Positions 1,975-31,102 of a stretch of DNA of 32,000 nucleotides are shown one piece after another (the first letter of the stretch is position 1; each line of letters starts with the position of its first letter). The position numbers and the translations under genes are program-made. The DNA is taken from assembly GCF_000400465.1 (NCBI RefSeq), contig NW_008806302.1, positions 30,001-62,000 on the forward strand, written 5' to 3'. Under the pieces are notes generated by a model. The model saw only the letters and a program-made list of their open reading frames with translations. It ran no database searches and was not told the DNA's origin. This stretch comes from Wallemia ichthyophaga EXF-994 (lineage: Eukaryota; Fungi; Basidiomycota).

Positions 1975-2047
1975 TGGAGATGCCCGGAATTGAACCGGGG
2001 ACCTCTTCCATGCTAAGAAAGCGCCATAACCACTAGACTACATCCCC
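1975..2047 (-). tRNA. tRNA-Ala(AGC)
   Basis: Reverse complement GGGGATG...CTTAGCATG...GGTTCAATTCC...CATCTCCA forms a 73-nt cloverleaf with anticodon AGC and the G3:U70 Ala identity pair. It is followed by a long T-run terminator (A-run at ~1959-1969 on +). Confidence 0.97.
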
Positions 2048-2815: not shown

Positions 2816-2949
2816 CCCTCCTTTTGTTTGAGTTGATGATGATGAAATCTAAATATATTGTTAAGACGATACATGTTTAAACTGCGTCGATCAATACTTC
2901 TTAAGGCATGAGGAGTCAAAGGGGATGCCGAATTCACTGGAAGCGTTTC

Positions 2950-3725
2950 TTGACTAGCGTCGTAATTTCTGAATTGTTGGTGGTTCTCAATTACGCTGAA
3001 CCACCGGAGTATCTTTGGTACGTAGTCAATTACGGTTTGAAGAACTCGTAAAGGGCTTGTAGAGAGTGTGAGTTTCTGAGTATTGGACCTAATTCGAAAC
3101 GAATATTGATCTTGGTAATCTTTCTTCTTAATGTGATTCTGGCCATTATATGTTTACGGCATATGAAGATTTTATGCGTGATAGTGTCCTCTGTGCCACA
3201 TGCACTGCATTTAGGTGAATCAATCAGTCGGAAACGGTAACGGTAGTACTTAGTCGTAGGGAATTGCCCTGACCGTAGCTGGGTGGCTAGGCATCTCGTT
3301 GCTCTGGGCAGTTCATTGAGTATCTTGGTCGATTTTGCTGCTGTCAGCCTTCCAGCTGATGTTTTTACGGCGTTGGACTTAATGTGTGATATTTTGGAGG
3401 CTTCTACTTTTATGGGTGCTGTATAGCGCTCGCACATTCTGCGTCGCATTGCAGAGTACGAAGTTTTGAGTGTTAGTTGACTCCACATAGCCCGGTGGGT
3501 CGGCCGTGTCCTACCCTCGTTAACGGTTCTGTCGGCTAGTTAGCTACCGTAAATATCCACATGTCCTGCGATCCAGTTTAGTTGGACAACAAAGTTTCTT
3601 CTCTTTGTTTGCTTAATCCAATCAATTTTGTCAAGGACCTGCTTTATCAAATATTGGCCTGTCTTTGTTGATTGCGATTGCACGATCGCTGAAAGAACCG
3701 CCTGACTGTCGCTATTGATAATAGA
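2950..3725 (-). mobile_element. 3' fragment of Tad1/I-type LINE ORF2 (RNase H C-terminus + CCHC knuckle) plus structured 3' UTR
   Basis: Frame reads INSDSQAVLSAI...GQYLI...QLNWIAGHVDIYGS*LAD (RNase H DSQ and WIxGHxxIxGNExAD motifs, stop at 3542-3540). It continues in frame with ORF 3488-3030: LATQLRSGQ...CSACGTEDTITHKIFIC (C-x2-C-x7-H-x4-C). A hairpin lies at 2950-3029 right after the stop. Confidence 0.9.
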
Positions 3726-3803: not shown

Positions 3804-3906
3804 GCTTTCGTGGCTTAGGGGTTATAGCGCCGTGTTAACATCGGCTCACCTTAATAGGTGAACAGTTGCTCCGCGGAGGTCGCCGGTTCGATTCCGGCCG
3901 AAAGCT
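3804..3906 (+). tRNA. tRNA-Val(AAC) with 30-nt canonical intron (3841-3870)
   Basis: Acceptor stem GCTTTCG/CGAAAGC, D-arm GCTT..TAGC, anticodon stem CCGTG/CGCGG with TTAACA, T-arm GCCGG-TTCGATT-CCGGC. The intron lies one base 3' of the anticodon and contains GTT complementary to AAC. A T-run terminator follows. Confidence 0.93.
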
Positions 3907-4611: not shown

Positions 4612-6411
4612 CTACACTGTTTTGTCGGCAAAAATTTCATTTAAGAAACTAACCCAATCGCTGTCTAATTCAGCAGCATTTAGGGGGTTGTTGCAATCAC
4701 GCATACATTCATCCAGCCATCCAGTGACTGACGGTGCCAGTGAGGGCTGTGCACATCTCAACTGAAGCGTATCGATCAACCCTTGGAACAATTCGTACGC
4801 CTTGCGCACCACACCATCCGTCAAACTTTTAGCCCTTAGCACTTGCATGGCTATATCAACATAACTCATGTGCTGTTCGTATGGTTGTTGAGCGCTGCGG
4901 AGAGTGCACACACTCAATATCATTATACCACTAGCGGTGATTGGACTCCAGTTTAGAAGCGCATCCGTGTAATTTACAACGAACCCACTTTCGTAATGCA
5001 GATAATAAAGTGTAGATAAAATGCTCTTTGCGGCATCTACACACAAGTTCAGCCCGCTAGTGCTTTGTGTCTTGAGATACTTCTTATTGATGAATATTTT
5101 CACGACACCATATCCTACTACCTTGAGACATTGTTGCTGCGAGGGCAAGTGTAAGGATTTCTGACAGCACCTCTTACCCCACTCATCCAAACGTCCATTC
5201 AAACTATCTACCATATCTACAGACACAACTTTCGATCTTTGCAGCGATACGACATCGGCTACGAGAGCATACAGGTCAATCATATTGTTGAAGTAGGTTA
5301 TTGAAGTGTCTTGTTTTATGTTAATACTCTCAGGTTTGGCCATGTCGATCCCATCTCGTAGTACTCGTCTACCACAGCTAATTGCGTAAGATTTATCGAG
5401 GATATAAAGCCCCCACAGTGCTCGCTTGCCTTCCTCGCACTGCGCTTTATCGAGCCTGCTGTCCTCAGCGAGGAGCACACCCAAGCCAATCACCGACCAG
5501 CAACTGCGGCAGTACTTTTGTGTGTTCTGCATTGCCAGTGCCTCCAAAACGACAGCCTGTATGGAGTGTACGGTGAGCGATGGCATAAGGAGGGCATTTG
5601 GCGCTTTGTGGGAGTACGTGTGCAGATAGGCGTCGGCGGAAGTGTGAGAGTGGTAGAGAGCGCCTAATGCGCATACCAAGAGCAACACACCTCCAAAATC
5701 TGCTGTTAGCTTACTGCTAGACACTCGCGCGAGGAATGCACTTTTGTCGGGAAACAGAGGCAGTGATGGATGGACATGGCTGAAATAGAGGTCTACTAGA
5801 GCGTAAACCAAGCTACTTTCACCGAAATCCGACTCATTGTAGTGCTGGTTGTAGTGCTTTGTGGAGGTAACGACATGACCATTAGCCTTGATGAGCGACT
5901 GGCGACTGTCTACGAATCCAGTAGCGAGAGCGAAGAGACCTTTATTGGATGCCATGCCAAATTCCCGTAGGTTTTCTTGGCTGTGCGGTGTTTGCTCTCC
6001 GCTGAGCCACATGGAACGTACAATATTTGAATACTCGGAATCAGAGTCTGGTTCTTGAGCGTGTGTAGAGCTATAAACAACGCTGTTCACTCTTCTCTTC
6101 TTGTGTAAGCTCTCGCTCGTGCCCACGCCCAGCTTACCCTCGAGCTCTTTCACCCTCTCCTCCAAACTGCGTACGTAAGCATAGGTGTGCCTCTTCTTGG
6201 GCGCACCATCTACGAATGTGCACGGCGTCTCTCTCTCGCCAGAGTGTCTCTTTTCAGCGCAATTGGAGCAAGTTTCTGGGTAGCGTTCGGCTGCGTCGCA
6301 CTTGATTTTCGATCGGCGGCAATAGTCACACTGCAGGAGTCAAAAGGTATTCTAATTTATACATCCACCCACTGCTCTCTTCAGTCGGCCCCTTTTATCA
6401 GATGATGACAT
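4612..6411 (-). CDS. Zn(II)2Cys6 fungal transcription factor with fungal TF (middle homology) domain
   Basis: ATG 6411, exon 6411-6373, 42-nt intron 6372-6331, then CDYCRRSKIKCDAAERYPETCSNCAEKRHSGERETPC leading into the 517-aa ORF (LVDLYFSHVHPSLPLF; KRALWGLYILDKSYAISCGR). Confidence 0.93.
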
Positions 6412-8881: not shown

Positions 8882-11232
8882 ATGAAAGACGCCAAAGAAA
8901 AACCTGCAAAGTCACGGAAGCAGAGGCCGCTATATAGCTGCGGTGGTGCGTATCCTTGCGTCAATTATCCCCGCTTACCCGTCACAATCCGCAGAATGCC
9001 GCAGACTCAAGTTGAAATGCGATCGCCAATGGCCATGCAACCAATGCAGACGGAGAGGCTGTTCAGCCATATGTCCGGATGGTACAATGAAAGGCGCAAC
9101 CATGTCCCGCCAGGCGCTCGTCGACAACACAAGCAACTTACTTTCGCGTATCGATCAGCTCGAGAGCAGCATCAGGTCCCAGGGCGGCATAGTCCCTCAC
9201 CCGGCCACTGAGCTCATTTGCAACGCAACTGCAGTGTTTAATTCCCCCAATTCCTCCGCTTACCCAACAACAACCCACAACGGCTTCGAGACGCATCAGG
9301 AGGACTTTGCTGAGAGTTTCGGTGCACTCACTGTTTCCAGAGAGGGCCAATCGCGCTATGTTGGTCCCAGCGCCGGCTCTGAGTGGCTCCAGAATGAGTC
9401 GCTGGAAGATACTGAGCAGGAAATTATTGACGAGAAGCGTCAGATTGGCGAGAGCTCTGATAGTCCGCCCTCCGATTTCCCATTCAGTGCGAGCAATAGT
9501 GGTGAAATCGTTACTGAGTTGTGGAAACAGCTGCCATCTCGAGAGATTGCTGGTGAGCTGACGGAGATCTACTACCGCACTTGCTCGTGTCTCTACAACT
9601 GCGTACAGCGCGATGTTTTCGAAAAGGATCTCGATATACTCTATGTTTATGTTCACCCAGACCCGCACAAGCTCGCTCGACTGTATATGGTCTTTGCGCT
9701 GGGCGTGTACTTCGACACTACCCGCTCTACCGACCACCCTGATTCGCAGCGCTTCTACAGCTATTCCAAATCCCTTCTCTCCGCTGGTGACTTTCTCGTC
9801 AAAAGCAGTATCCCCGCGGCGCAGACGCTGCACATGATGGGTCTCTATCTACTTAATAGGAATAGGTTGAGCGGGGCTGATTCTTATTATCCACTTCTCG
9901 GTGTACAGTTGCGCATTGCGCGTGCAATGGGTCTGCATCGCGACGGTGCGCGCTGGGGATTCACTCAGGCGGAGTTGAATGAGCGGCGGATGACGTTCTG
10001 GGAGACTCAGACGATGGACGTCTTTCAGTCTATCTGTTTTGGTAGGCCTTACTCGACGCAATTGCGCCATGTGGACTGCAAATTTCCCCGCGATGAACAC
10101 CCTGATGCGCAAAATGCAGGGTTTCAGACACTGCGTTACACGCTTGTCAGACTCTTGTGCAAGATCAGCGATGACATTTATAGCGTAAAGCCACCGACAT
10201 ATGATGTTGTCATTGCGCTCGATAGGGAAGTGCGGCAGTATGACAAAGACATACCACCCCATCTGCGCTGCAATGCTGCGGCCGTCGTGCGAAATAGTTC
10301 AAATTACCCTCTCAAGCGGGAAGCAGTGGATGGGGAGGAGTTGATTCTACAGCAGCACACACTCGCTATGAATGTGAATGAATGCCTACTCTATATAAAC
10401 AGACGCTATTTTGCACATGCACTCAAAACTCACCCTCAAAACCCTCTCAAGTCACCCTTCGCGCAGTCGTTCATTGCCGTAATGGAGTGTTGCAGGGTGG
10501 GTAGTTTTCCATGTGTTTGTTGGCTACATATACTCACACTTTCACTAGGTAATGGTCGCACTCGGTCAGAGCATCCACCGTCTCCTCCCGGACCTTTCTG
10601 CGCGGCACTTTTTCTTTTTCTATCATATGTTCAGCTTCGGGGTGTGCTCGGCAGCGTCCTGCATCATCTCGCCTGGATCTTCGATGGCAAGTGATGCGTG
10701 GATGGATCTCAACTCCATCACCGACCTCTGTGCACTACCCAGCGCAGGAAAGCGCGCAAATCAATTCGTACCGGCGCTCAATAAACTTCGGGAGCGTGCG
10801 CTTGTACGCTGCAAAGAACACATAGAAGCTAAGGTGCACAACACGGATGATCACGATAACGAACATATGGTCATGCTAGGTTTGGGAAGCAGGGTGGTGA
10901 CGACGGAAACGCAAACTACGCGTTTCAAAACGCCAACAAGTGGAGGAGTGTTGGATGGATTGTTCGAGAATGACAAGGGCCCCAATCCCTCTGATCAAAT
11001 CTACTCCCAACTCCTCAAACAGACTGAAGGTACACCGAGCAGTGCGGAAATGTTCAATAACCTTTGGAATATCCCAAATGACACCAACTCCGCTTTATCA
11101 CTCAGCGGTAGTACAAACGAATACAACAACATCTTCCCTAGCTCTCTCGACTTCATGGAAATGGATAGCGTACTTAATGGCACACAAAGCGACACAGATT
11201 GGACAGCTGTGCTGAGGAGTATGGGTTTATGA
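8882..11232 (+). CDS. Zn(II)2Cys6 fungal transcription factor with fungal TF domain
   Basis: Exons 8882-8945, 8995-10496 and 10549-11232 (introns 49 and 52 nt). Zn cluster CGECRRLKLKCDRQWPCNQCRRRGCSAIC; LRIARAMGLHRDG and ERRMTFWETQTMDVFQSICFGRP motifs. Confidence 0.95.
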
Positions 11233-12155: not shown

Positions 12156-13414
12156 GTTTGAGTGTTTCCTGGTGAGAACTAACTGACGTTTGCCGCTCTC
12201 GATCGATCGTTTCCCCGTATAGCTGATGTTGTATCTCGATCACGCATCAATTTTCCCCTGCTTATCCGCAGCTGGGCTTCTTGAGTGGAGTAAATCCGAG
12301 GACGCAGGAATTCCTCCTAATTCCTTGATTGCTCTCAGTACAGCTTGGTGGGGGGAAAATAAGATTCAGGGGCACTGCTGATGCTGTCCGCACACCCTTC
12401 GCAACCCTCGAATCGCAGCTGTCAGCATCTTCGGCTTCTTTATCCTTTAAATAGCTATCGAATTTTGAAAAGACTGGATGCTTTGAGTCTTTAGGTTTAT
12501 GAGCTTCTTCACTTGTCTTATTTCCTCACGATCCCTTTTCAAACAAGACGCGCGACGCGCCTTGTCAATTTTAAGCGAACAAGACTCGTAGCCGATGGCA
12601 AAAATGAAACACAGTCATAAAATAAAGTACATAATTAACTTATCTCAACAAATTGTTTTTCAATTATTGTGATATCTCCACAAAAGTTTTGTAGCACTAG
12701 TGGTATTTCGATTATATAAGACACGTCATGGGAAGAGTAGAATTTTATCAAAAAGAAAAAGCTTCTTTAATATCCTGTCTTCTGAAACTATGACGCGACC
12801 TTACTTGATTCTTTTCCCTCATCATTTAGTTGCTATAAATGCACCTAATGAAGCCAAAACACCGATTTCAGAGTGGATTTGACCCCACTTTCCTTTACAG
12901 TAAACAGTTTTACAAGGCTTATAATGAATTAAAGTTGTCTTACTTTTCCTCTGGGGTCAGGGTTAAGAGCTGGATACACCGCGCGTCGGAAATACATTAC
13001 GTGATTTGAGCGCAGTGTACTTAAGATATATGGAAGCTTGTGGTTTCTAAAAGCCCGATAAGTAATTAGCATCAATGAAGTGTGTGATACTCTCCGTATG
13101 TCTTATGTTGCGTGCGAACTTCCGAGCAGCGTTTAGAGGGCGATAGGAAGCCATGGTAGATAAAACAAGCCAAAAGTACAAATCAAAATTTGGGCTATCA
13201 ATTGAGCTCTTTTGTTTGAAGAATTTCCATTTAGGCAGACGGAAAATTTAACTCTGTGAATACTGGGCATGAGATAGAAATTCGAACAGATCTGAAATGA
13301 TTGAGAGTTCACAAAGTAATAATGCGTCAAAAATTACTCTTTAACACCAAAATTTAATTCACCTTCATACCTCGGCAATCTCTGCCCGCACTAACGCTAG
13401 GGTTACTTTGAGCA

Positions 13415-13422
13415 TATAAAAG
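13415..13422 (+). promoter_or_regulatory. TATA box of U2 copy 1
   Basis: TATAAAAG ~33 nt upstream of the predicted U2 5' end; duplicated at 18032-18039. Confidence 0.65.
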
Positions 13423-13447
13423 CGGCCTCTCTTCATCCTTAATCCTC

Positions 13448-13631
13448 ATCCTCTCTGGCCTTTTGGCTTAGATCAAGTGTAGTATCTGTTCTTCCAAGTT
13501 CGAACAACTTGGATCGCATAACTTATGCGACAAACGTTCGATCTAATTTTTATCTGCGTCCACTCACCCTCACTGCTTGCATAGGGTAAGTGGAAGATGG
13601 CCTTGTGTTGCACTACCGTTTGTGCCGTCAG
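13448..13631 (+). ncRNA. U2: U2 spliceosomal snRNA, copy 1
   Basis: ATCCTCTCTGGCCTTTTGGCTTAGATCAAGTGTAGTATCTGTTCTT (U2 5' domain with branch-recognition GTAGTA). Stem IIa CCAAGTT/AACTTGG has a loop complementary to downstream GTTCGA (IIc). Also present: stem IIb TCGCATAA/TTATGCGA, Sm site AATTTTTA, stem III, and stem IV with TTGCACTACC loop. Ends are approximate. Confidence 0.97.
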
Positions 13632-13864
13632 CGCACATTTATACTCCAACCCCATCACACATTTTAGCATGTCTCTGCTATTCTCACATAGCACTGACTT
13701 GTCGAAAGTTGTGAATTACCTACTATGGCGCCTAGATACTATGAGACGGACGTAAATTCAATTAAATTGACACCAAAGATGTTGTAAGATCATTATCAAA
13801 TGTATTTAGTAAAAGAAATACACAATTATCCGTTTTTATTGCGTATTCGGTGCCTCCAGCGAGC

Positions 13865-14530
13865 CTAACAGACGGAAGTTGCTGCTCCGATGTCCTCCTC
13901 ACGAGAGCCAGCGCCTCTGCTTTCACAACAGTCAACCATGCCTCCTGTGTTAATGCCGTTCACCTTTCCGGATGGTTAGAATGGTTTATTAGCTATCAAG
14001 GGCCATAACTTACGACTTTATAGATTGTCAGAGTGGTTCTCTGCAAAGCTAAGCCCAAACTTACGGACTGCAGATGTCAGAATCATCACTAAGCAAATAA
14101 AATGCTTACTTACGACTAATTGAGTTAGAGCGTTTTGCAAGCAAATTAAACCCCAAACTCAGGGATACATTGATGGAACACTTCCTGATTTTAGTTAGTG
14201 AGTTAAGTCTAATCTTAAATAGCAAGTACACACATCAAAGCGTGTGTTTTGATTGACGGCTGCACAGCAATCCTTAGTGACTAGAAAAGACAATTTTCAT
14301 CAGCTATGATTCACATATCGACCCAACGTACTTTGTCTTTCGACGCTGAATTATATGTTAGAAGGTGCTAATCAGTATGAAAAATTCTTACCAGCCGCCA
14401 CCGCCCGTGCAGACCTAATTATCAATTGGAAATGCTCAGAAGATCATACCGAACTCACCTCAGCTGGGCCACCAGCCGCGACGAGAGTGACGGTTGAGAG
14501 AAGAGCTGAAACAGTGATGAGCTTGAACAT
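13865..14530 (-). CDS. small secreted cysteine-rich protein (95 aa, 8 Cys, 9 exons incl. 2-, 3-, 2-nt microexons)
   Basis: Exons 14530-14459, 14414-14392, 14345-14332, 14280-14234, 14184-14159, 14115-14114, 14067-14065, 14015-14014 and 13963-13865 give MFKLITVSALLSTVTLVAAGGPAEVCTGGGGCVERQITKDCCAAVNQNTRFDEVFHQCIPDLLVNGINTGGMVDCCESRGAGSREEDIGAATSVC*. It has a signal peptide, a TATA (GTATAAAA) ~50 nt upstream, and is collinear with the paralog at 15987-16475. Confidence 0.8.
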
Positions 14531-15424
14531 TGTTGGTAGAATTGAGATGTTTTGAAAAGAGAATATAAAGACAGATTTTATACGTTAGAGAAGCTCGGAA
14601 GTTCCTAGCTTTTTAATTGCGATATATACTGATTCATTCCTCTGCATAATTATAGATTTCGTATAACTTCCGACATTTAGGCGAGGCGAGGGTGTAGCAA
14701 TATGGGCGCATTAGCACCTCAAAATACACTTTCAGTGATTACTAGATAGTCGAAAAGTACAGAAACCATCTTCAAGGCTGCTTGCTTATTCAACTTACGA
14801 CTAGATTAGACATAACTCGGATTTTAAGCGACACAAGATTGTTCCTAAGTCAAAAGAACGCGGAGAAAGAATGGCTGTAAGCATGCCAATTTGCGAATAC
14901 TTGTGATTATTGAGAAGACTTAATGCATTTTCACCTTAAAAGTGAGACTAAAGAAACAACCAGAACAATTATTTTTACATTTTGGATTATTCAAAGCCAA
15001 AATTTCCACTTTCGCTGCATCTTGACAATCTATCGCTAGGTTAGTGCAGGAGTATTCAGTCAGGCAGTATATTTGAAAAAAAAAGTTCGAGGCTTCGTCG
15101 CTTTTTGAACTGCATCTATTCTATCCAAACTTCCTGTGATGTGACAAAAGCATCACGATATCCAAAGATTTGACTCGTAGCTGATGTGATTTTGTAACAC
15201 AATAGTGCTGCATACTCTAAATTCCCTAAAACGATATCCGGTCAATTTAATGAGCCGAAGCGAGATGAGATCAGTAGTTAATATTTGAAATTAGTTATGT
15301 ATTCATTATGAATGTTACGACTGTCTTTAGAACTGCACGACTAAGCTGATCAGCAATCAAGCCTATTCATCTGAAGATCTATTAAATCCAATCAAATATT
15401 GTAGTCAGTAGCACAAGTAGAAAG

Positions 15425-15872
15425 ATGGATAGTAAGTTCAGTCTTTATGACACCAAAGAGCATCCGAAAAAGCTTTTGAGGATGTGCGCCGCCAGGCAGA
15501 TCTTGGTACTCTCATCGTGCACTATGTTCTCATCCCCTGGCAAAATTCTGACAGATCACCTCAAGTGTGTAAATTGCTGGTTTAAGTTGACACTCAAAGT
15601 TAAGCATGGACATCAACTAATCTTATTGCCATCTCGAAATATGATTGTTGAAGGAAAACCTTCTTGTACAAGTGCTCAATAGTAAGGATTTTTGTGTGAG
15701 TGTGATTTTCCGCTTTCGCAAATCAGCTTGCAACTGACTTTAACTATCTCATTCTTTTGCACAAGATCTTTTCGGACATGAAATTGCTACCCTTCCTCGA
15801 CAGTACAAGAGATCTTCTGAAGATGATCATACTAAGGCAAATGTAAACATTGGGCGCTTGGTTTTTACCTGA
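15425..15872 (+). CDS. possible multi-exon hypothetical gene
   Basis: ATGGATA|GTAAGT intron then FEDVRRQADLGTLIVHYVLIPWQNSDRSPQ, with later exon-like pieces ENLLVQVLNSKDF and LFGHEIATLPRQYKRSSEDDHTK...FT*. The middle splice junction is not resolved. Confidence 0.3.
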
Positions 15873-15986: not shown

Positions 15987-16475
15987 TTAACAGGTTGGGT
16001 TATCAGCTCCAAAGCTTTCTGCGCTGCTACCGGCGCCTCTGCTTTCGCAGCAGCTGACCATTGCGCCGGTATCGACAGAGTTGACGCCATATCTTTCAGT
16101 CGCTGTGAGAATGTCTTGTTGCTGCTAGTAAAAGTAAGATTCACGGTACACATTGGTTCAAACGCTCGTCGAACCTTGCTGATTGATCTTGCGTGAGAGT
16201 TAAAATCATGTCTTAATGTGTTCAAAGGCTTGCTTACCAACTTCAGCGCATCAATCCTTAGTGACTAGAAGGAGAAATTTCCATCAGCAAACATTGTCAA
16301 TTTTGAGTAAACTTACTTTGATACTCAGTGCTAAGCACGTGTAAGTTAGCATGGTCTCTTGATTCAGCATGTTAAACATCTACCATCCGCCTGAATCTGT
16401 GCAGATTTCTGAACCGCCAGCCGCAATGATTGCAAGTGCTGAAAGAAGAGCTGAAAGAGTAGCGATTTTGTACAT
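15987..16475 (-). pseudogene. paralog of the small secreted 8-Cys protein with in-frame TGA at conserved Cys3
   Basis: Exons 16475-16384, 16330-16317, 16264-16238, 16187-16145 and 16092-15987 give MYKIATLSALLSALAIIAAGGSEICTDSGGCTEYQITKD*CAEVDQSARFDERLNQCVPYGVNSVDTGAMVSCCESRGAGSSAESFGADNPTC*. TGA at 16253-16251 aligns to TGC in the paralog. TATA ~50 nt upstream. Confidence 0.8.
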
Positions 16476-18002: not shown

Positions 18003-18331
18003 CCGCACTAACGCTAGGGTTACTTTGAGCATATAAAAGCGGCCTCTCTTCATCCTTAATCCTCATCCTCTCTGGCCTTTTGGCTTAGATCAAGTGTAGT
18101 ATCTGTTCTTCCAAGTTCGAACAACTTGGATCGCATAACTTATGCGACAAACGTTCGATCTAATTTTTATCTGCGTCCACTCACCCTCACTGCTTGCATA
18201 GGGTAAGTGGAAGATGGCCTTGTGTTGCACTACCGCTTGTGCCGTCAGCGCACATTTATACTCCAACCCCATCACACATTTTAGCATGTCTCTGCTATTC
18301 TCACATAGCACTGACTTGTCGAAAGTTGTGA
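18003..18331 (+). repeat. 329-bp direct repeat, copy 2 (U2 snRNA gene unit)
   Basis: Matches 13386-13714 with one substitution. Confidence 0.97.
18065..18248 (+). ncRNA. U2: U2 spliceosomal snRNA, copy 2
   Basis: Same sequence and structure as copy 1 apart from C18236 in the stem IV region. Confidence 0.97.
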
Positions 18332-23463: not shown

Positions 23464-25219
23464 ATGACAGTTATTAAATCAATATTCAGCGATGCAGATA
23501 TCCCCAAGATTAGCCTCTTCGATCACATTTTGCCGCAGGAACAATCTAAGAACAGCAGTGTGGTCTACGTGGATGCACAAACAGGGCGCTGCTTAACAAT
23601 CTCAGAGCTGCGCAGAGACGCCCTCCGCCTGGCTTATGGACTAAGGAAGTACCACAACATCGGCAGAGGAGATAGCGTGCTTATCGTAAACCACAACTCA
23701 ATTACATATCCAGTACTCTTCTTCGCCGTGATAGCCACTGGCGCAACGGCATCACTCGCCAATCCAGCCAACAAGCACCTCGAAATGTCCCATCAGATAA
23801 AAGATAGCGACATCTCCTTCGTTTTCGCAAATCCTGACAAAATAGAGCTATGCAGTATCATACTGAGGGAAAGAGGCTGGTCGGAGAATAGGGTGAGCGA
23901 TAGGGTAGTATCAGCTACTGAAAACAGCCCTAGAAGTTTCAAATCATACGCTCAACTCCTTTGCAACGACCTGCAGAAGGGTGTTCCTGAGACATTTGCA
24001 GGCGAGGATGCTCACAGTGTTGCCGTCACATGCTATAGCAGTGGTACGACAGGTGTAGCAAAAGGAGTGATGACGACACATTACAATCTCGTCGCCAACC
24101 TCACACAATTAGACTGGTCACGCGCGTACAGCACACAGAAATCAGATGTTGTCTTGGCTGTCCTCCCTTACTACCACATCTTTGGGCTCACATCCCTTCT
24201 ACTCAACTTCCTCAAGAGGGAGAATATGAGTGTAGTCTTGCCCCGCTTCTCCCTTGAAGCTTTCGGTGCTGCTGTCGAGAAATACAGGGTAACGCTCACG
24301 GCGGTTGTACCACCGATTCTCCACTCGATCGCGAAAGAAGATGTGGAAAGGAGGCATGGCATGTCCAGTCTGAAAATTCTCAATGTGGGCGCTGCGCCTG
24401 TCAGCCCCAAGCTGATAGAGCAGATTGGGGAAAAATTCAATAGCAGCGTGCTCGTCTCGAATGGCTATGGTCTCACTGAGACTAGTCCAGTCACGCACAA
24501 ACTGCCACTAGAATACGCCAGGTCACATAGCGGCTATATTGGCAGAATGCTCTCAAACACCACCGCGCGTCTCGTGGATGAAAATGGCAAGGATGTACCT
24601 GGAGATAACAAGTCGAGTGGAGAGTGAGTATTTAGACTTTGTATGGTTCCCATTTCACACCCCACCCCAGACTCTGGATTAAAGGGCCGCAAGTCATGAG
24701 GGGTTATTTGAATAACCCCCAAGCTACAGCCCAGTGCATGACTTCAGACGGATATTTCAAGACTGGCGATATAGCAATATACGATGATCAGACGTTCCTC
24801 TTCAAGATAGTAGGCAGACTGAAGGTTAGTGGGATAGCTACGAAAAAATTCGTAGCTAAAATGTACTCCAGGAAATGATAAAATACAAAGGCATTCAGGT
24901 GGCACCGTCATCTCTAGAAGCGGTGCTTTTATCTCATCCTCAAGTGAATGATGCGGCTGTTATAGGCGTTTACGACGACAGACAGGTGACGGAACTTCCC
25001 AGAGCCTATATCGTGCCTCAGGATGCAGCCAATTTCGACAACCAAGTATTTTGCAATGAAATAGAAGCCTGGGTGGCAGACATAGTTGCAAATTATTCCA
25101 AATTGCGCGGAGGCGTGCACACAATCGACGTCATCCCTAAAACTCCTTCTGGGAAAATTGTCAGAAGACATTTGCACATGCTTGCCGCTCAGCAGCATAT
25201 AGGACTGGCTAAGCTCTAG
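23464..25219 (+). CDS. 4-coumarate-CoA ligase-like acyl-CoA synthetase (ANL family), peroxisomal
   Basis: Exons 23464-24623, 24671-24824 and 24872-25219 (two 47-nt introns). Motifs CYSSGTTGVAKG, VLPYYHIFG, GYGLTETSP, GELWIKGPQVMRGY, YFKTGD, RLKEMIKYKG and IPKTPSGKI. C-terminal AKL is a PTS1. Confidence 0.95.
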
Positions 25220-28944: not shown

Positions 28945-31102
28945 TCAGCCGTATTGACTTGAATATTGAATGATATCTACCTCATCGATGGATGGATTGG
29001 ATGCGTGACAACTTTGATTGTGTTCTTCCATGTATTTTTCCAGCTCTTCAACTGTAGGTGGATGCGGTGGAGGGTGTGGCGGCTTAAACGCTCTCTTCAC
29101 ACTTTCGGATTCAAAATTGCATGAGTTTCGGATCTTTTCGAGTGTTATTTGAACGGCTGGAGCGTCACATGGATGATATTCGAGTAGCTGCTCAATTGCT
29201 CCTAAGATACCCCTCGCAACATATAGCGCCAGTACTAGATCAGAATCGAGTCCAAATAAATCAAGACATCGCAAAGCTTGTACTGATAACACACCTAGAA
29301 TCATTGGAGCATCACGTATACTGCCTCCGATGAACTTTAAGAATAGTCAAGAGATGCTCAGAGATGGATTGTGTTGTAAAACTCACCTGCCTATAGATGT
29401 AAGAATGATCTTCAAGCCACTTCTTTGCTTGTATTCTGGTGAAGTATCCTCTTTGTCTTATTCTAGAGTCATTCATGCGTTTCAGCTTTGCGGTGAGCAC
29501 TAGCTTTGTGATGAAGAGGGCATTTGAAACTTGCCATCGAGGTATACCGTTATGGCAAGTGTGTTTACCCAGCTCCGCCTCAATATTGTCAGCCTCTTGG
29601 ATTATTTTCAGCGCTCTCAAATGAAAATCCAGTGGCGGTAGTCGCAATCTCATAGCGCCATGACACAGCAGCTTGCCTCGATCTAGCAATGCATACATAG
29701 TGCGCCTTGACCAATCTCGCTCATATTGATCTGGAAGATTAGCAACGAAGTGCTCGGAAGTCAGAAAAATACCGTAGTTGGAGCTGTCGTTAATGTAAAG
29801 AGGGTTGAGTGTTGGCTGAAACATTTGCTGGTACCAGCTTTGGTTGAGCGCGCCCCATACCACTCTTCTAATCTCCTCAGCTTTCACCATATTCTCATCT
29901 GACTCGTCTAATGCGAACCTAGCTAAAAACCGAAACCTGATACCTTCCTTCTTTTGCGTTGATTGCTCATTGTAAGTCCACTTCATACATGGGCAGTCCA
30001 GCTGCGTTGATATCTCTTCAATTTGCGAAAACGAGTGCGATTCTGATACTGGGGTTAGCGGTTCCGGTTGTGCTGGCTGATCCAAATCTGCCGTTTTAAT
30101 CGGTACAGCGTCGTCATCAAGAACGTAAAGCACTTTGTCAGCATCGAGAGTAGTCAGTCCGAGTGTTCTGATGACTGTATCAGCAATTGTCAAGCTGGCA
30201 CCCAACCGTTGTACATCAAAGAGGGGCTTTGGAAGAAACTCATAATACTGCAGACAAACTGCAGCCTGCGCCAAGCCTAGAGATATATTGCTAGTGCTGA
30301 TAGCTGACATTAGGTGGCTATGTGACCTCTCAGCGTAATTCAGAGCCTTGAGTTTCGACTCGGTAGCAAAAGTTTGGTCGCATCTACCTTTAAAAACATA
30401 CGAGATTGCCAGAAGGGCATATATAAGCGCTGGCTCAATAGCGCCTCTCTTTCTTGAGTTCATAATTACTTCGAAGAAGCTAGGTAGGTGAAACATTGTT
30501 GCGATGAAGTCACCTCTTTGAAAGACTAGTGACAGGTCGGCAGCAATAACTTTAAGAGTCGTATTTCTATCCAGCCGAGACTCACTCATTTTTTCACCAA
30601 TCAAGTAATCCCAATACGTGTTCTGCTGGTAATTTCGATCTGGATGAAGAAGAAGTGGAGGCGAAGTGGAGGTCGCATTGTACGACGTCTGGTATGCAAA
30701 CTCAGGAAAGTTGCTAGTGTACAGTATATTCGCATCATTGCTATTTCTTGACTTGAAAAACGGATGCGGTAACGTTGGTTCATTGTCGTCGTGATCGGTT
30801 TCTTCGTAATCCGTGTCAGAATACGTCGTCCCACTAGTACTTGGCCTAGACAAAGCCATCTCTTGGTTCTCGAAGGATGCTGCAGCAGACATTGCTGCTT
30901 GTTTGGCAGCTTCAATCCGCTTAGCGCTAGCTCTTGGCTTGCGATCTTTTCCGCGTCTCTTTATGACGCCTTCAAAGACGCATTCAAGGGCCTTCTTGGT
31001 GCATCTATCACACGGGCCGTCTTGATTAGAGCTGATACACTTGGATTTTGATCTGCGACAGCTCAGGCAAGCGTTGATGCCCCTGCTGGTCTGATTTTGC
31101 AT
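28945..31102 (-). CDS. Zn(II)2Cys6 fungal transcription factor
   Basis: CLSCRRSKSKCISSNQDGPCDRCTKKALEC cluster. The 52-nt intron 29386-29335 (GTGAGT..AAG) joins track ORFs 31102-29312 and 29304-28945 in frame. Confidence 0.92.

What the first reader, a model, noticed from the sequence alone, without database searches (positions are those of the whole stretch)
13964..14113. Microexon-flanking introns look like tandem duplicates of one ancestral intron (intron gain caught in progress)
Seen: introns C (GTAAGTTTGGGCTT..AACCACTCTGACAATC..AAAG) and D (GTAAGTTATGGCCCTT..AACCATTCTAACCATC..AAAG) share a 5' end, a 13/16 match around the branch point and the rare AAAG acceptor. Intron B shares GTAAGT, GCTTAG and TCTGACA(A)TCT with C. 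The period is ~48-52 nt. The paralog has just one intron at this spot (16144-16093, ending CATTCTCAC..GAAAG, resembling D). The two paralogs also differ at other intron positions: one has an intron after PAE, and they differ between EV-G and FD. Inference: repeated tandem duplication of an intron plus 2-3 exonic nt created new introns and microexons, and this small gene family has rapid intron turnover.
Basis: partly seen in the sequence, partly recalled or inferred. Interest (0 to 1): 0.75.

Follow-up and report, generated by a model that had tools for sequence, protein, structure and literature searches.

The report
Four tandem copies of one intron

Summary
The window is W. ichthyophaga EXF-994. 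The gene is J056_002871 (minus strand, 14530-13865), a DUF5948 8-Cys secreted protein induced about 28-fold at 30% NaCl.

Introns B, C and D (14113-13964), together with intron A (14161-14116), have canonical GTRAGT...CTRAC...HAG signals. Of 191 canonical splice paths, only the four-intron path yields CIP-LL-VNGIN, which matches relatives that read CIPLLANGIN.

A closer relative (Logan contig L010) has one 47-nt intron at the same CC| site. All four array introns resemble that intron more than any of 30 unrelated Wallemia introns do. The same-genome paralog E1 has none there.

Three details are not:
- The total exonic sequence is still 7 nt, so the event was not a simple tandem duplication of intron plus exon bases.
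- The copies are old (51-63% core identity) and invariant across resequenced strains, so this is not a gain in progress.
- The B-C similarity alone is not significant.

The reference sequence also lacks the first G of intron A. Splicing is inferred only; no RNA reads could be examined. Public gene models are wrong at this spot.

The parts
13865..14530 (-). Gene W1 = J056_002871 / GME4749_g. It encodes a DUF5948 (PF19373) 8-Cys secreted protein. Coordinates run from ATG to stop. The CDS of about 285 nt holds 8 introns.
   Evidence: Gene model. Pfam DUF5948 E=1.6e-19. Identified as EXF-994 J056_002871. RPKM 0.77 at 10% NaCl and 21.4 at 30% NaCl in Zajc et al. 2013 Table S6.
14162..14184 (-). Exon 5 (GAAGTGTTCCATCAATGTATCCC). 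It ends in CC of the Pro codon, which is the ancestral 'e' intron position (phase 2).
   Evidence: W2, E2, X1 and H6 have an intron at the same position.
14116..14161 (-). Intron A, 46 nt in this window and 47 nt in other strains. The window lacks the first G of the GTGAGT donor. A cryptic GTTTGG donor at 14158 keeps the frame and would add one Asp.
   Evidence: Alignment with L004-L007. It is the only indel in 3.7 kb. It is 31/47 identical to the single L010 intron, with a core score of 10, above all 630 null pairs.
14114..14115 (-). Microexon 1 (TC)
14068..14113 (-). Intron B (46 nt; GTAAGT...TTCTGAC...GCAG). It is the most diverged copy.
   Evidence: Score against the L010 intron is 3 (empirical p=0.009-0.013; shuffle z=2.7).
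14065..14067 (-). Microexon 2 (TCC)
14016..14064 (-). Intron C (49 nt; GTAAGTTTGGGC...AACCACTCTGAC...AAAG). Its insertion context TCC^TC is identical to that of intron A.
   Evidence: A-C scores 8 (above the null maximum) and C against the L010 intron scores 5 (p=0.008, z=3.5).
14014..14015 (-). Microexon 3 (TC)
13964..14013 (-). Intron D (50 nt; GTAAGTTATGGC...AACCATTCTAAC...GGAAAG)
   Evidence: D against the L010 intron is 35/50 identical, with a core score of 11 (above the null maximum, z=5.5).
13865..13963 (-). Last exon (VNGINTGGMVDCCESRGAGSREEDIGAATSVC*)
14185..14233 (-). Intron d (after RFD|E). It is shared with X1 and absent from the same-genome paralog E1.
15987..16475 (-). Paralog W2 (introns b, c, d', e). 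It has a single intron at the CC| spot (16144-16093) and an in-frame TGA at 16253-16251.

Best explanation
**What it is.** The ancestral 'e' intron of this DUF5948 gene sits after CC of the Pro codon in the motif C-I-P-L-L. In the W. ichthyophaga lineage it was copied three more times into sites 2, 5 and 7 nt downstream. The result is four homologous U2-type introns (A-D, 46-50 nt) separated by microexons TC, TCC and TC.

**How it is spliced (inferred).** Each intron keeps a full signal set: GTRAGT, YTCTRAC 9-12 nt from the 3' end, and HAG. I infer that each is removed separately, giving CC+TC+TCC+TC+GTG = CCT CTC CTC GTG (P-L-L-V). With exons of only 2-3 nt, neighbouring spliceosomes cannot assemble together, so removal must be one intron after another, in a recursive-like manner.

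**How the copies arose (inferred, not resolved).** The copying left the exon unchanged at 7 nt. It was therefore either a precise insertion of an intron copy, or a tandem duplication of intron plus k nt followed by loss of the k downstream bases.
- A precise insertion could occur by microhomology-primed templated repair at the TC-rich run. It could also occur by reverse splicing followed by reverse transcription and recombination.
- In the tandem-duplication route, the duplicate would first be spliced as one large intron. The internal cryptic microexon would be adopted only after the downstream bases were lost.

**Related changes.** The same-genome paralog E1 lost intron d and the e site precisely. 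That pattern fits cDNA-mediated loss of 3' introns. In the EXF-994 reference, a 1-nt deletion removes the GT of intron A.
For: **Homology supports the splice model.**
- Of 191 canonical splice paths through the region, 11 keep an ORF. Only the four-intron path gives EVFHQCIPLLVNGINTGG, with the family's invariant P-x-x-x-N spacing.
- The 7 microexon bases, TCTCCTC, match X1 (CCTCCTC) at 6 of 7 positions and E1 (TCTTCTT) at 5 of 7. All differences are synonymous.

**A single-intron state exists.** X1 in L010 is the closest outgroup. CDS identity is W1-E1 85.8%, W1-X1 80.3%, E1-X1 79.1% and W1-W. hederae 75%. X1 has introns a-e, with one 47-nt intron at the e site.

**The copies are homologous.**
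- Scores of A, B, C and D against X1_e sum to 29. For any reference intron, the best cherry-picked four unrelated introns sum to at most 12.
- The result holds with the branch motif masked and with a composition-matched background.

**Signals and population data.**
- The signals are intact in all four copies, and B, C and D are 3 of only 6 strict intron patterns in the 32 kb.
- The array is invariant in four other assemblies.

**The gene is expressed.** It is transcribed and induced by salt.

**Exons of this size are documented.** Long-read data for the basidiomycete Coprinopsis cinerea show 57 exons of 2 nt and 27 of 3 nt (PMC12230235). Fusarium has a 1-nt exon (PMC12940212).

**Insertion contexts repeat.** A and C, the most similar pair within the array, share the context TCC^TC. 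B and D share CCTC^. This is read directly from the sequence.
Against: - No RNA evidence for the junctions was available. No protein of any splice model is in the 15-billion-sequence collection, and the spliced junction is absent from JGI metagenome contigs.
- All public annotations use a different model.
- Similarity within the array is modest (51-63% core identity against a null of 48.5 +/- 4.8). B is only marginally related to the others.
- The background set of introns is small (30-38 introns, mostly from the same gene family).
- Polarity rests on one outgroup locus of unidentified species (Logan run SRR25399871).
- The EXF-994 copy has a broken donor in intron A and its neighbour W2 carries a stop codon, so the locus could be decaying in this strain.
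- None of the proposed copy mechanisms is demonstrated.
Confidence: 0.7

Rival explanations
1. The four-intron array is ancestral and the other genes lost introns. On this view X1 precisely lost B, C and D but kept A, and E1 lost everything, so nothing was gained in W1.
For: Divergence within the array (pooled 56% core identity) is at least as deep as between W1 and E1 introns (65%) and similar to W1-X1 orthologous introns (55%). The array may therefore predate the W1/E1 duplication. Intron loss is clearly frequent in this family: E1 lacks d and e, the W. hederae copies lack a-e, and the W. mellicola copies have no introns.
Against: X1 would have had to lose three introns lying 2-3 nt apart while keeping A, only 2 nt from B, and intron d, and leaving the 7 exonic bases intact. 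The paralog clade (W2, E2, H6) also has just one intron at this site. The mutual homology of A-D still requires a multiplication event at some point.
Confidence: 0.1
2. The units are not spliced individually. Either the public model is right (cryptic donor, exon TCGTAA, most of intron C translated as a 16-aa insert), or the block is removed in some other way, or W1 is a decaying gene and the array is a non-functional local duplication.
For: All deposited annotations (J056_002871, E3P81_04134 and others) use such models. The EXF-994 allele has lost the GT of intron A. The neighbour W2 has a premature TGA. Expression is modest at 21 RPKM, against 59,657 RPKM for E2.
Against: The annotated model inserts RNLGLALQRTTLTIYK into a region where the other aligned homologues have exactly three residues (one distant homologue, P0021, has a few more). 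It is what ab initio predictors produce because they cannot-3-nt exons (the genomes were annotated with MAKER, Augustus and SNAP). All 12 splice signals of B-D are intact although about 40-50% of the other positions have diverged. The only path that restores P-L-L-V-N uses all four introns. Other strains have the canonical GTGAGT donor.
Confidence: 0.12
3. The introns are copies of a dispersed introner-like or transposon-derived element that inserted repeatedly here, not local copies of the resident intron.
For: Introner-like elements and multi-copy introns are known in fungi (PMC3609843; PMC9860276 listed). Only about 75 kb of Wallemia DNA could be searched here.
Against: The diagnostic motifs AACCAYTCTRAC and GTRAGTTTRGGS occur nowhere else in the window or in the fetched Wallemia loci except the orthologous L010 intron. 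The units are 46-50 nt, shorter than the genome's mean intron (61-68 nt). They have no stable fold (z=-0.03), no terminal repeats and no target-site duplication. The oldest copy sits at a position shared with paralogs.
Confidence: 0.05
4. The similarity is chance plus shared splice signals and AT-rich composition.
For: Several individual pairs are not significant: A-B, B-C, A-D and B-D have p=0.07-0.17. One unrelated pair (C against X1_a) reaches a score of 7. TRF reports nothing.
Against: The joint statistics exclude it. None of 20,000 random quadruples reaches the within-array sum. The sum against X1_e is 29, compared with at most 12 for any cherry-picked control. The result holds after masking the branch motif and with a composition-matched background.
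Confidence: 0.03

Closest known systems
Same-gene intron duplications (SGD) in fungi (van der Burgt et al. 2012; Collemare et al. 2013, PMC3609843)
   Same: Related introns occur at different positions of one gene. [quoted passage not shown]
   Different: The described SGDs are near-identical and were found by BLASTN. Here the copies are old (51-63% core identity). There are four in direct tandem, 2-3 nt apart, and they create microexons. SGDs were not reported from Wallemia or other basidiomycetes in that survey (C. neoformans had 0 SGD).
Ultra-short microexons (1-3 nt) in fungi: Coprinopsis cinerea long-read annotation (PMC12230235) and the Fusarium CYP621A 1-nt exon (PMC12940212)
   Same: Exons of 1-3 nt are flanked by canonical short introns. 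They are needed to keep the frame and a conserved motif. Gene predictors miss them, and they are inferred by alignment with intron-poor relatives.
   Different: Those reports do not show that the flanking introns are copies of each other. The Fusarium paper proposes frameshift rescue by a cryptic exon inside an intron. Here three microexons lie in a row and the flanking introns are homologous, which points to how they arose. Transcript proof exists for those cases and not here.
Stwintrons and complex intervening sequences of fungi (Flipphi, Fekete and co-workers; e.g. PMC7138796, PMC6616335)
   Same: Several U2 intron units are packed together and must be removed by consecutive splicing reactions. 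Local duplication of splice elements, through double-strand-break repair, is proposed as their origin.
   Different: In a stwintron one intron interrupts a splice signal of another and nothing exonic remains between them. Here the units abut through 2-3 exonic bases that must stay in the mRNA, and each unit has complete signals of its own.
Intron gain by tandem genomic duplication of an AGGT-containing exon segment (named here from general knowledge; tandem duplication is listed among the proposed gain mechanisms in PMC7138796)
   Same: It is a local DNA duplication that leaves the mRNA unchanged.
   Different: In that model the new intron consists of duplicated exon sequence. Here the new introns resemble the pre-existing intron and not the exon.
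Recursive splicing at ratchet points (Drosophila long introns; general knowledge)
   Same: Removal is stepwise, and each splice recreates or exposes the next 5' splice site directly after a 3' splice site.
   Different: Ratchet points have zero-length exons inside very long introns. Here 2-3 nt are retained at each step and the units are about 48 nt.

Membership tests
U2-type spliceosomal introns (fungal short-intron class) | 5' donor GTRAGT/GTNNGT | tested here: met
   B, C and D start with GTAAGT. A starts with GTGAGT in four other assemblies; the window lacks the first G.
U2-type spliceosomal introns (fungal short-intron class) | Branch motif CTRAY a short distance upstream of an HAG acceptor | tested here: met
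   CTCTAAC, TTCTGAC, CTCTGAC and TTCTAAC lie 9-12 nt before TAG, CAG, AAG and AAG respectively.
U2-type spliceosomal introns (fungal short-intron class) | Actually removed from the transcript | not testable with these tools
   No read-level RNA data were available. The only support is indirect: the frame and the P-L-L restoration, and the fact that the gene is transcribed.
Same-gene intron duplication (SGD) | Introns of one gene are significantly similar to each other | tested here: met
   The within-array sum is reached by 0 of 20,000 random quadruples. A-C and C-D are individually significant. All four match the single outgroup intron. They are not near-identical, however (51-63% core identity).
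Same-gene intron duplication, segmental type | Flanking exon sequence is duplicated together with the intron | tested here: not met
   Total exonic sequence between CC and GTG is 7 nt, as in X1 and E1.
Introner-like elements / introners | Many near-identical copies in unrelated genes | tested here: inconclusive
   There are no other copies in the 32-kb window or the fetched Wallemia loci. The whole genome was not searchable.
Introner-like elements / introners | Longer than regular introns, with a stable predicted structure | tested here: not met
   The units are 46-50 nt, against a genome mean of 61-68 nt. The fold z-score is -0.03.
Stwintron (nested spliceosomal twin intron) | An internal intron interrupts the donor, branch or acceptor element of an external intron, and no exon bases remain between the two | tested here: not met
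   Each unit has complete signals, and 7 nt must be retained to keep the frame.
Ultra-short microexons (<=3 nt) | Needed for the reading frame and a conserved motif, and flanked by canonical AG/GT | tested here: met
   unique path to CIPLLVNGIN; family alignment.
Ultra-short microexons (<=3 nt) | Transcript reads that contain the microexon | not testable with these tools
   Searches were negative look-ups, which are uninformative.
DUF5948 (PF19373) small cysteine-rich secreted proteins | Significant match to the Pfam model; 8 conserved Cys; signal-peptide-like N terminus | tested here: met
   E=1.6e-19, 70 bits against a cut-off of 23.7. Family alignment. No solved structure exists.

The most novel reading that the evidence does not exclude
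The array may be a sequence-level footprint of a spliceosomal intron re-inserting into its own gene at sites that mimic its original exon junction. A and C share the context TCC^TC, and B and D share CCTC^. The route would be reverse splicing, or microhomology-templated repair. If so, this would be a general route by which the 1-3-nt exons now being found in basidiomycetes arise.
Probability: 0.2. Interest if true: 0.85.

Novelty: new variant of a known kind. Interest (0 to 1): 0.62.

Why it matters
How new spliceosomal introns arise is still argued over, and clean cases are scarce. This locus offers three states of one site:
- four homologous introns in W1;
- one intron in X1 and in the paralogs;
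- none in E1, in the same genome.

The exon sequence is held constant throughout, which rules out the simplest duplication model. It narrows the options to precise copy-insertion, or duplication followed by adoption of a cryptic microexon.

The locus also suggests an origin for the 1-3-nt exons recently documented in fungi. It can be tested directly with existing W. ichthyophaga RNA-seq data and simple RT-PCR.

On the practical side, every public model of this gene is wrong. That includes the RefSeq/UniProt entry of the type strain.

Tried and rejected
- **TRF on 13500-14700** found nothing. The copies are too diverged.
- **A crude semi-global score with shuffles** made only A-C significant. 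I replaced it with an empirical null built from introns of other positions.
- **ORF-constrained intron finding in the window** gave only 7 candidates. That is too few for a background, so I used introns of family members and neighbours from other loci.
- **A single 188-nt intron (GTTTAA donor, giving CIPEFGVNGIN)** looked attractive in the window alone, because it resembles the paralog's YGVN. I rejected it once the other strains showed the GTGAGT donor at CC| and the orthologues showed LLA.
- **L008 and L001 as 'another lineage'** was my first reading. Cluster membership showed that the window itself is EXF-994 and that L008 is a paralogous locus of the same genome.
- **Exact look-up of four candidate proteins** and a **junction search in metagenome contigs** both found nothing.
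- **RNA folding of the array** showed no structure.
- **Intron d as a further copy of e** is not supported. W1_d against A scores 5, but X1_d against X1_e scores -6.
- **The duplication order among A-D** cannot be resolved from about 40 informative columns.

Full report
**What the window is.** Protein searches place the window in Wallemia (Basidiomycota, Wallemiomycetes). Cluster look-ups show that it is the type-strain reference genome, W. ichthyophaga EXF-994. The window's own proteins sit on a 73,418-nt contig together with J056_002871.

The gene in the finding, called W1 here, runs on the minus strand from ATG 14530 to stop 13865. It encodes a ~94-aa signal-peptide-bearing protein with 8 Cys, of family DUF5948/PF19373 (E=1.6e-19). 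No relative has a solved structure. In Zajc et al. 2013 (PMC3849046, Table S6) it is GME4749_g. Its RPKM is 0.77 at 10% NaCl and 21.4 at 30% NaCl. Its relative E2 (GME4675_g = J056_002800) reaches 59,657 RPKM.

**Checking the observation.** The minus strand reads:
- exon 5, ending ...TGT ATC CC at 14162;
- intron A (14161-14116);
- TC;
- intron B (14113-14068, 46 nt);
- TCC;
- intron C (14064-14016, 49 nt);
- TC;
- intron D (14013-13964, 50 nt);
- GTG AAC GGC...

The paralog W2 (16475-15987) has one intron at 16144-16093.

The strict pattern GTRAGT..CTRAC..HAG occurs only six times on both strands of the whole window. Three of those occurrences are B, C and D.

**A missing base in the window.** Four other W. 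ichthyophaga assemblies cover this locus (L004-L007, 99.5-99.8% identical; one contig is shared by six samples). They read ATCCC-G-TGAGTTTGGGG where the window reads ATCCC-TGAGTTTGGGG. This is the only indel among 28 differences in 3.7 kb.

With the G, intron A starts with a canonical GTGAGT directly after CC, the same phase-2 position as the paralog's intron. Without it, a weak GTTTGG donor 3 nt downstream keeps the frame and adds one Asp. If intron A is retained, the frame runs into a stop (...CIPEFGV*). None of the resequenced strains' deposited proteins carries that extra Asp. The missing G is therefore either private to the reference culture or an assembly error.

**Is the microexon model right?** I enumerated 191 splice paths through the region using canonical donors and acceptors. 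Eleven keep an ORF. Only the four-intron path gives ...EVFHQCIPLLVNGINTGG..., with the family's P-x-x-x-N spacing.

The close relatives read CIPLLANGINTGG, and three of them encode it without interruption: E1 in the same genome, W. hederae and W. mellicola. The seven microexon bases, TCTCCTC, match X1 (CCTCCTC) and E1 (TCTTCTT), and all the differences are synonymous.

The public models (P0030, P0001 and others) use GTAAGC inside intron B as the donor and the AAG of intron C's own donor as the acceptor. They then translate intron C as RNLGLALQRTTLTIYK. That is a predictor artefact, because MAKER, Augustus and SNAP cannot-3-nt exons.

Exons of this size are real in basidiomycetes. Long-read annotation of Coprinopsis cinerea has 57 exons of 2 nt and 27 of 3 nt (PMC12230235). 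A 1-nt exon in Fusarium is confirmed by SRA reads (PMC12940212).

I could not see RNA reads for W1. Exact look-ups of four candidate proteins and a search for the spliced junction in metagenome contigs found nothing. Splicing therefore remains inferred.

**Relatives and polarity.** W. ichthyophaga has a second, paralogous locus (L008, contig KE007249). It carries E1, then a U2 snRNA gene, then E2 (= P0007), then a delta-12 desaturase.

A Logan assembly of run SRR25399871 (L010) carries X1 next to the desaturase orthologue. CDS identities are:

| Pair | CDS identity |
|---|---|
| W1-E1 | 85.8% |
| W1-X1 | 80.3% |
| E1-X1 | 79.1% |
| W1-W. hederae | about 75% |
| W1-W. mellicola | about 68% |

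X1 is therefore the closest outgroup to the W1/E1 pair. Intron content is as follows:

| Gene | Introns |
|---|---|
| X1 | a, b, c, d, e |
| W1 | a, b, c, d, e(=A), B, C, D |
| E1 | a, b, c only (d and e precisely absent) |
| W2, E2 | b, c, d', e |
| W. hederae P0006 | a, b, c, e, f', g |
| W. hederae L002 copies | f (one copy also has b and c) |
| W. mellicola copies | none |
| Two agaricomycete homologues | one intron, at a further position |

That makes 13 intron positions in about 285 nt. The e position is shared across both Wallemia clades, so it is ancestral. B, C and D are unique to W1.

**Are A-D copies of one intron?** X1's single e intron is GTAAGTTTAGGCTTTAAATGGCTTATAAACCACTCTAATATGCGCAG. 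I scored intron pairs by global alignment with the donor hexamer and acceptor triplet removed. The null was 630 pairs of Wallemia introns from different positions (mean -7, maximum 7). Results:

| Pair | Score | Empirical p |
|---|---|---|
| A-X1e | 10 | above null maximum |
| D-X1e | 11 | above null maximum |
| A-C | 8 | above null maximum |
| C-X1e | 5 | 0.008 |
| C-D | 5 | 0.008 |
| B-X1e | 3 | 0.013 |
| A-B, B-C, A-D, B-D | -2 to 0 | not significant alone |

- **Joint tests.** The six within-array scores sum to 10, against -45 +/- 15, and 0 of 20,000 random quadruples reach that. The four scores against X1e sum to 29, whereas the best four cherry-picked unrelated partners of any intron sum to at most 12.
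- **Robustness.** The result survives masking of the branch motif and a composition-matched background. Shuffle z-scores are 4.9, 2.7, 3.5 and 5.5.
- **Dispersed copies.** The diagnostic motifs occur nowhere else in the window or in the fetched loci. The array has no unusual fold (z=-0.03). Within the limited DNA searchable, there is no sign of a dispersed introner family.

**Age of the copies.** Core identity within the array is 51-63% (pooled 56%). Against X1e it is 55-66%. W1-E1 introns are at 65%, W1-X1 orthologous introns at 55%, and the alignment-optimised null is 48.5 +/- 4.8%.

The copies are therefore old. They are roughly as old as, or older than, the W1/E1 duplication, unless they diverged faster than other introns. 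They are invariant in the strains for which this locus was fetched. This is a completed gain, not one in progress. If the array predates W1/E1, then E1 lost intron d and the whole array at once. That would fit cDNA-mediated loss of adjacent 3' introns. This step is inference.

**Mechanism.**
- **Shown.** The total exon length is unchanged at 7 nt.
- **Consequence.** A plain tandem duplication of 'intron + k exonic nt' would add k bases per event (2+3+2 = 7, a frameshift). It cannot be the whole story.
- **Option (i): precise insertion of an intron copy at the DNA level.** A break in the TC-rich run CCTCTCCTC would be repaired by microhomology-primed copying of the adjacent intron.
- **Option (ii): reverse splicing.** The excised intron would re-enter a nearby site of the transcript, followed by reverse transcription and recombination.
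- **Option (iii): tandem duplication plus compensation.** The duplicate would first be spliced out as one large intron. A later slippage loss of the k downstream bases would then make the internal cryptic microexon obligatory. This resembles the rescue idea proposed for the Fusarium 1-nt exon.
- **Insertion contexts.** A and C, the most similar pair within the array, share TCC^TC. B and D share CCTC^. This fits options (i) and (ii).
- **Splicing order.** With 2-3-nt exons, neighbouring spliceosomes cannot sit side by side. Removal must be sequential. This rests on established knowledge of spliceosome footprints and was not tested here.

**Comparison with known systems.** Same-gene intron duplications are known in fungi, but they are near-identical, rare and not in tandem (PMC3609843). 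Stwintrons are packed, consecutively spliced units, but they are nested and leave no exon bases (PMC7138796). Ultra-short microexons are documented, but their flanking introns have not been shown to be copies of each other. I found no report of tandem homologous introns separated by 2-3-nt exons. The library searched is limited to open-access papers.

**Verdict.** I rate it a new variant of known kinds. Its interest is moderately high for intron evolution, and it depends on RNA confirmation that existing data could supply.

Noticed in passing
window 13448-13636 (+) and 18065-18253 (+); repeats 13386-13685 = 18003-18302; L008:2679-2870: Two U2 snRNA genes lie within 300-nt stretches that are 100% identical and bracket the W2-W1 gene pair. 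A third U2 gene sits beside the paralogous gene E1 at the other locus. The relative in L010 has none nearby. The gene order looks like a circular permutation of gene1-U2-paralog, which suggests a segmental duplication with U2 at the junctions.
   Followed up: partly
window 16251-16253 (-), within W2 (16475-15987): The paralog W2 has an in-frame TGA in place of the first Cys of the conserved CC motif (ITKD*CAEV). It is not annotated in EXF-994. It is probably a pseudogene or a reference error. Other strains could not be checked because the fetched contigs end at 16030.
   Followed up: partly
window between 14162 and 14161 (-): The EXF-994 reference lacks the G that begins intron A in all four other assemblies. 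This is the only indel in 3.7 kb. No resequenced strain's deposited protein shows the resulting extra Asp. It may be a reference error or a private donor-site mutation.
   Followed up: partly
window 13865-14530; public proteins J056_002871 (P0030), E3P81_04134 (P0001), P0002, P0009, P0014: All public gene models of W1 are wrong around the array. They translate intron C, and in some cases other introns, which gives products of 109-130 aa instead of 94.
   Followed up: yes
L008:4001-4490 (E2 = J056_002800 = GME4675_g) and neighbouring desaturase: The paralog E2 is among the most highly expressed genes at 30% NaCl (59,657 RPKM, 23-fold induced). The adjacent delta-12 desaturase is induced as well. 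The DUF5948 family seems to be a major salt-response product of unknown function.
   Followed up: no
window 3804-3906 (+): Rfam reports a 103-nt tRNA match, presumably containing an intron, that ARAGORN does not report. ARAGORN finds only tRNA-Ala(AGC) at 1975-2047 (-).
   Followed up: no
L003 (W. mellicola), L012 (Logan ERR12743351), L002 (W. hederae, three tandem copies): W. mellicola-type homologues have no introns at all. W. hederae has three tandem copies with one intron at a different site (N-G|I). One W. hederae copy appears to have a GC-AG or decayed intron c (GCTAGT...).
   Followed up: partly
window 2839-2955 vs L008:4764-4893 and L009:1721-1850; window 15457-15546 vs L008:6181-6270: Short stretches of about 90-130 nt, 77-83% identical, are shared between otherwise unrelated parts of the two loci. 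They may be small dispersed repeats.
   Followed up: no
window 4612-6165 (-), 8943-10694 (+), 29312-31102 (-): Three ORFs match fungal transcription-factor domains: two match Fungal_trans and one matches the Zn(2)-Cys(6) binuclear cluster. An AMP-binding enzyme ORF is at 23464-24627.
   Followed up: no
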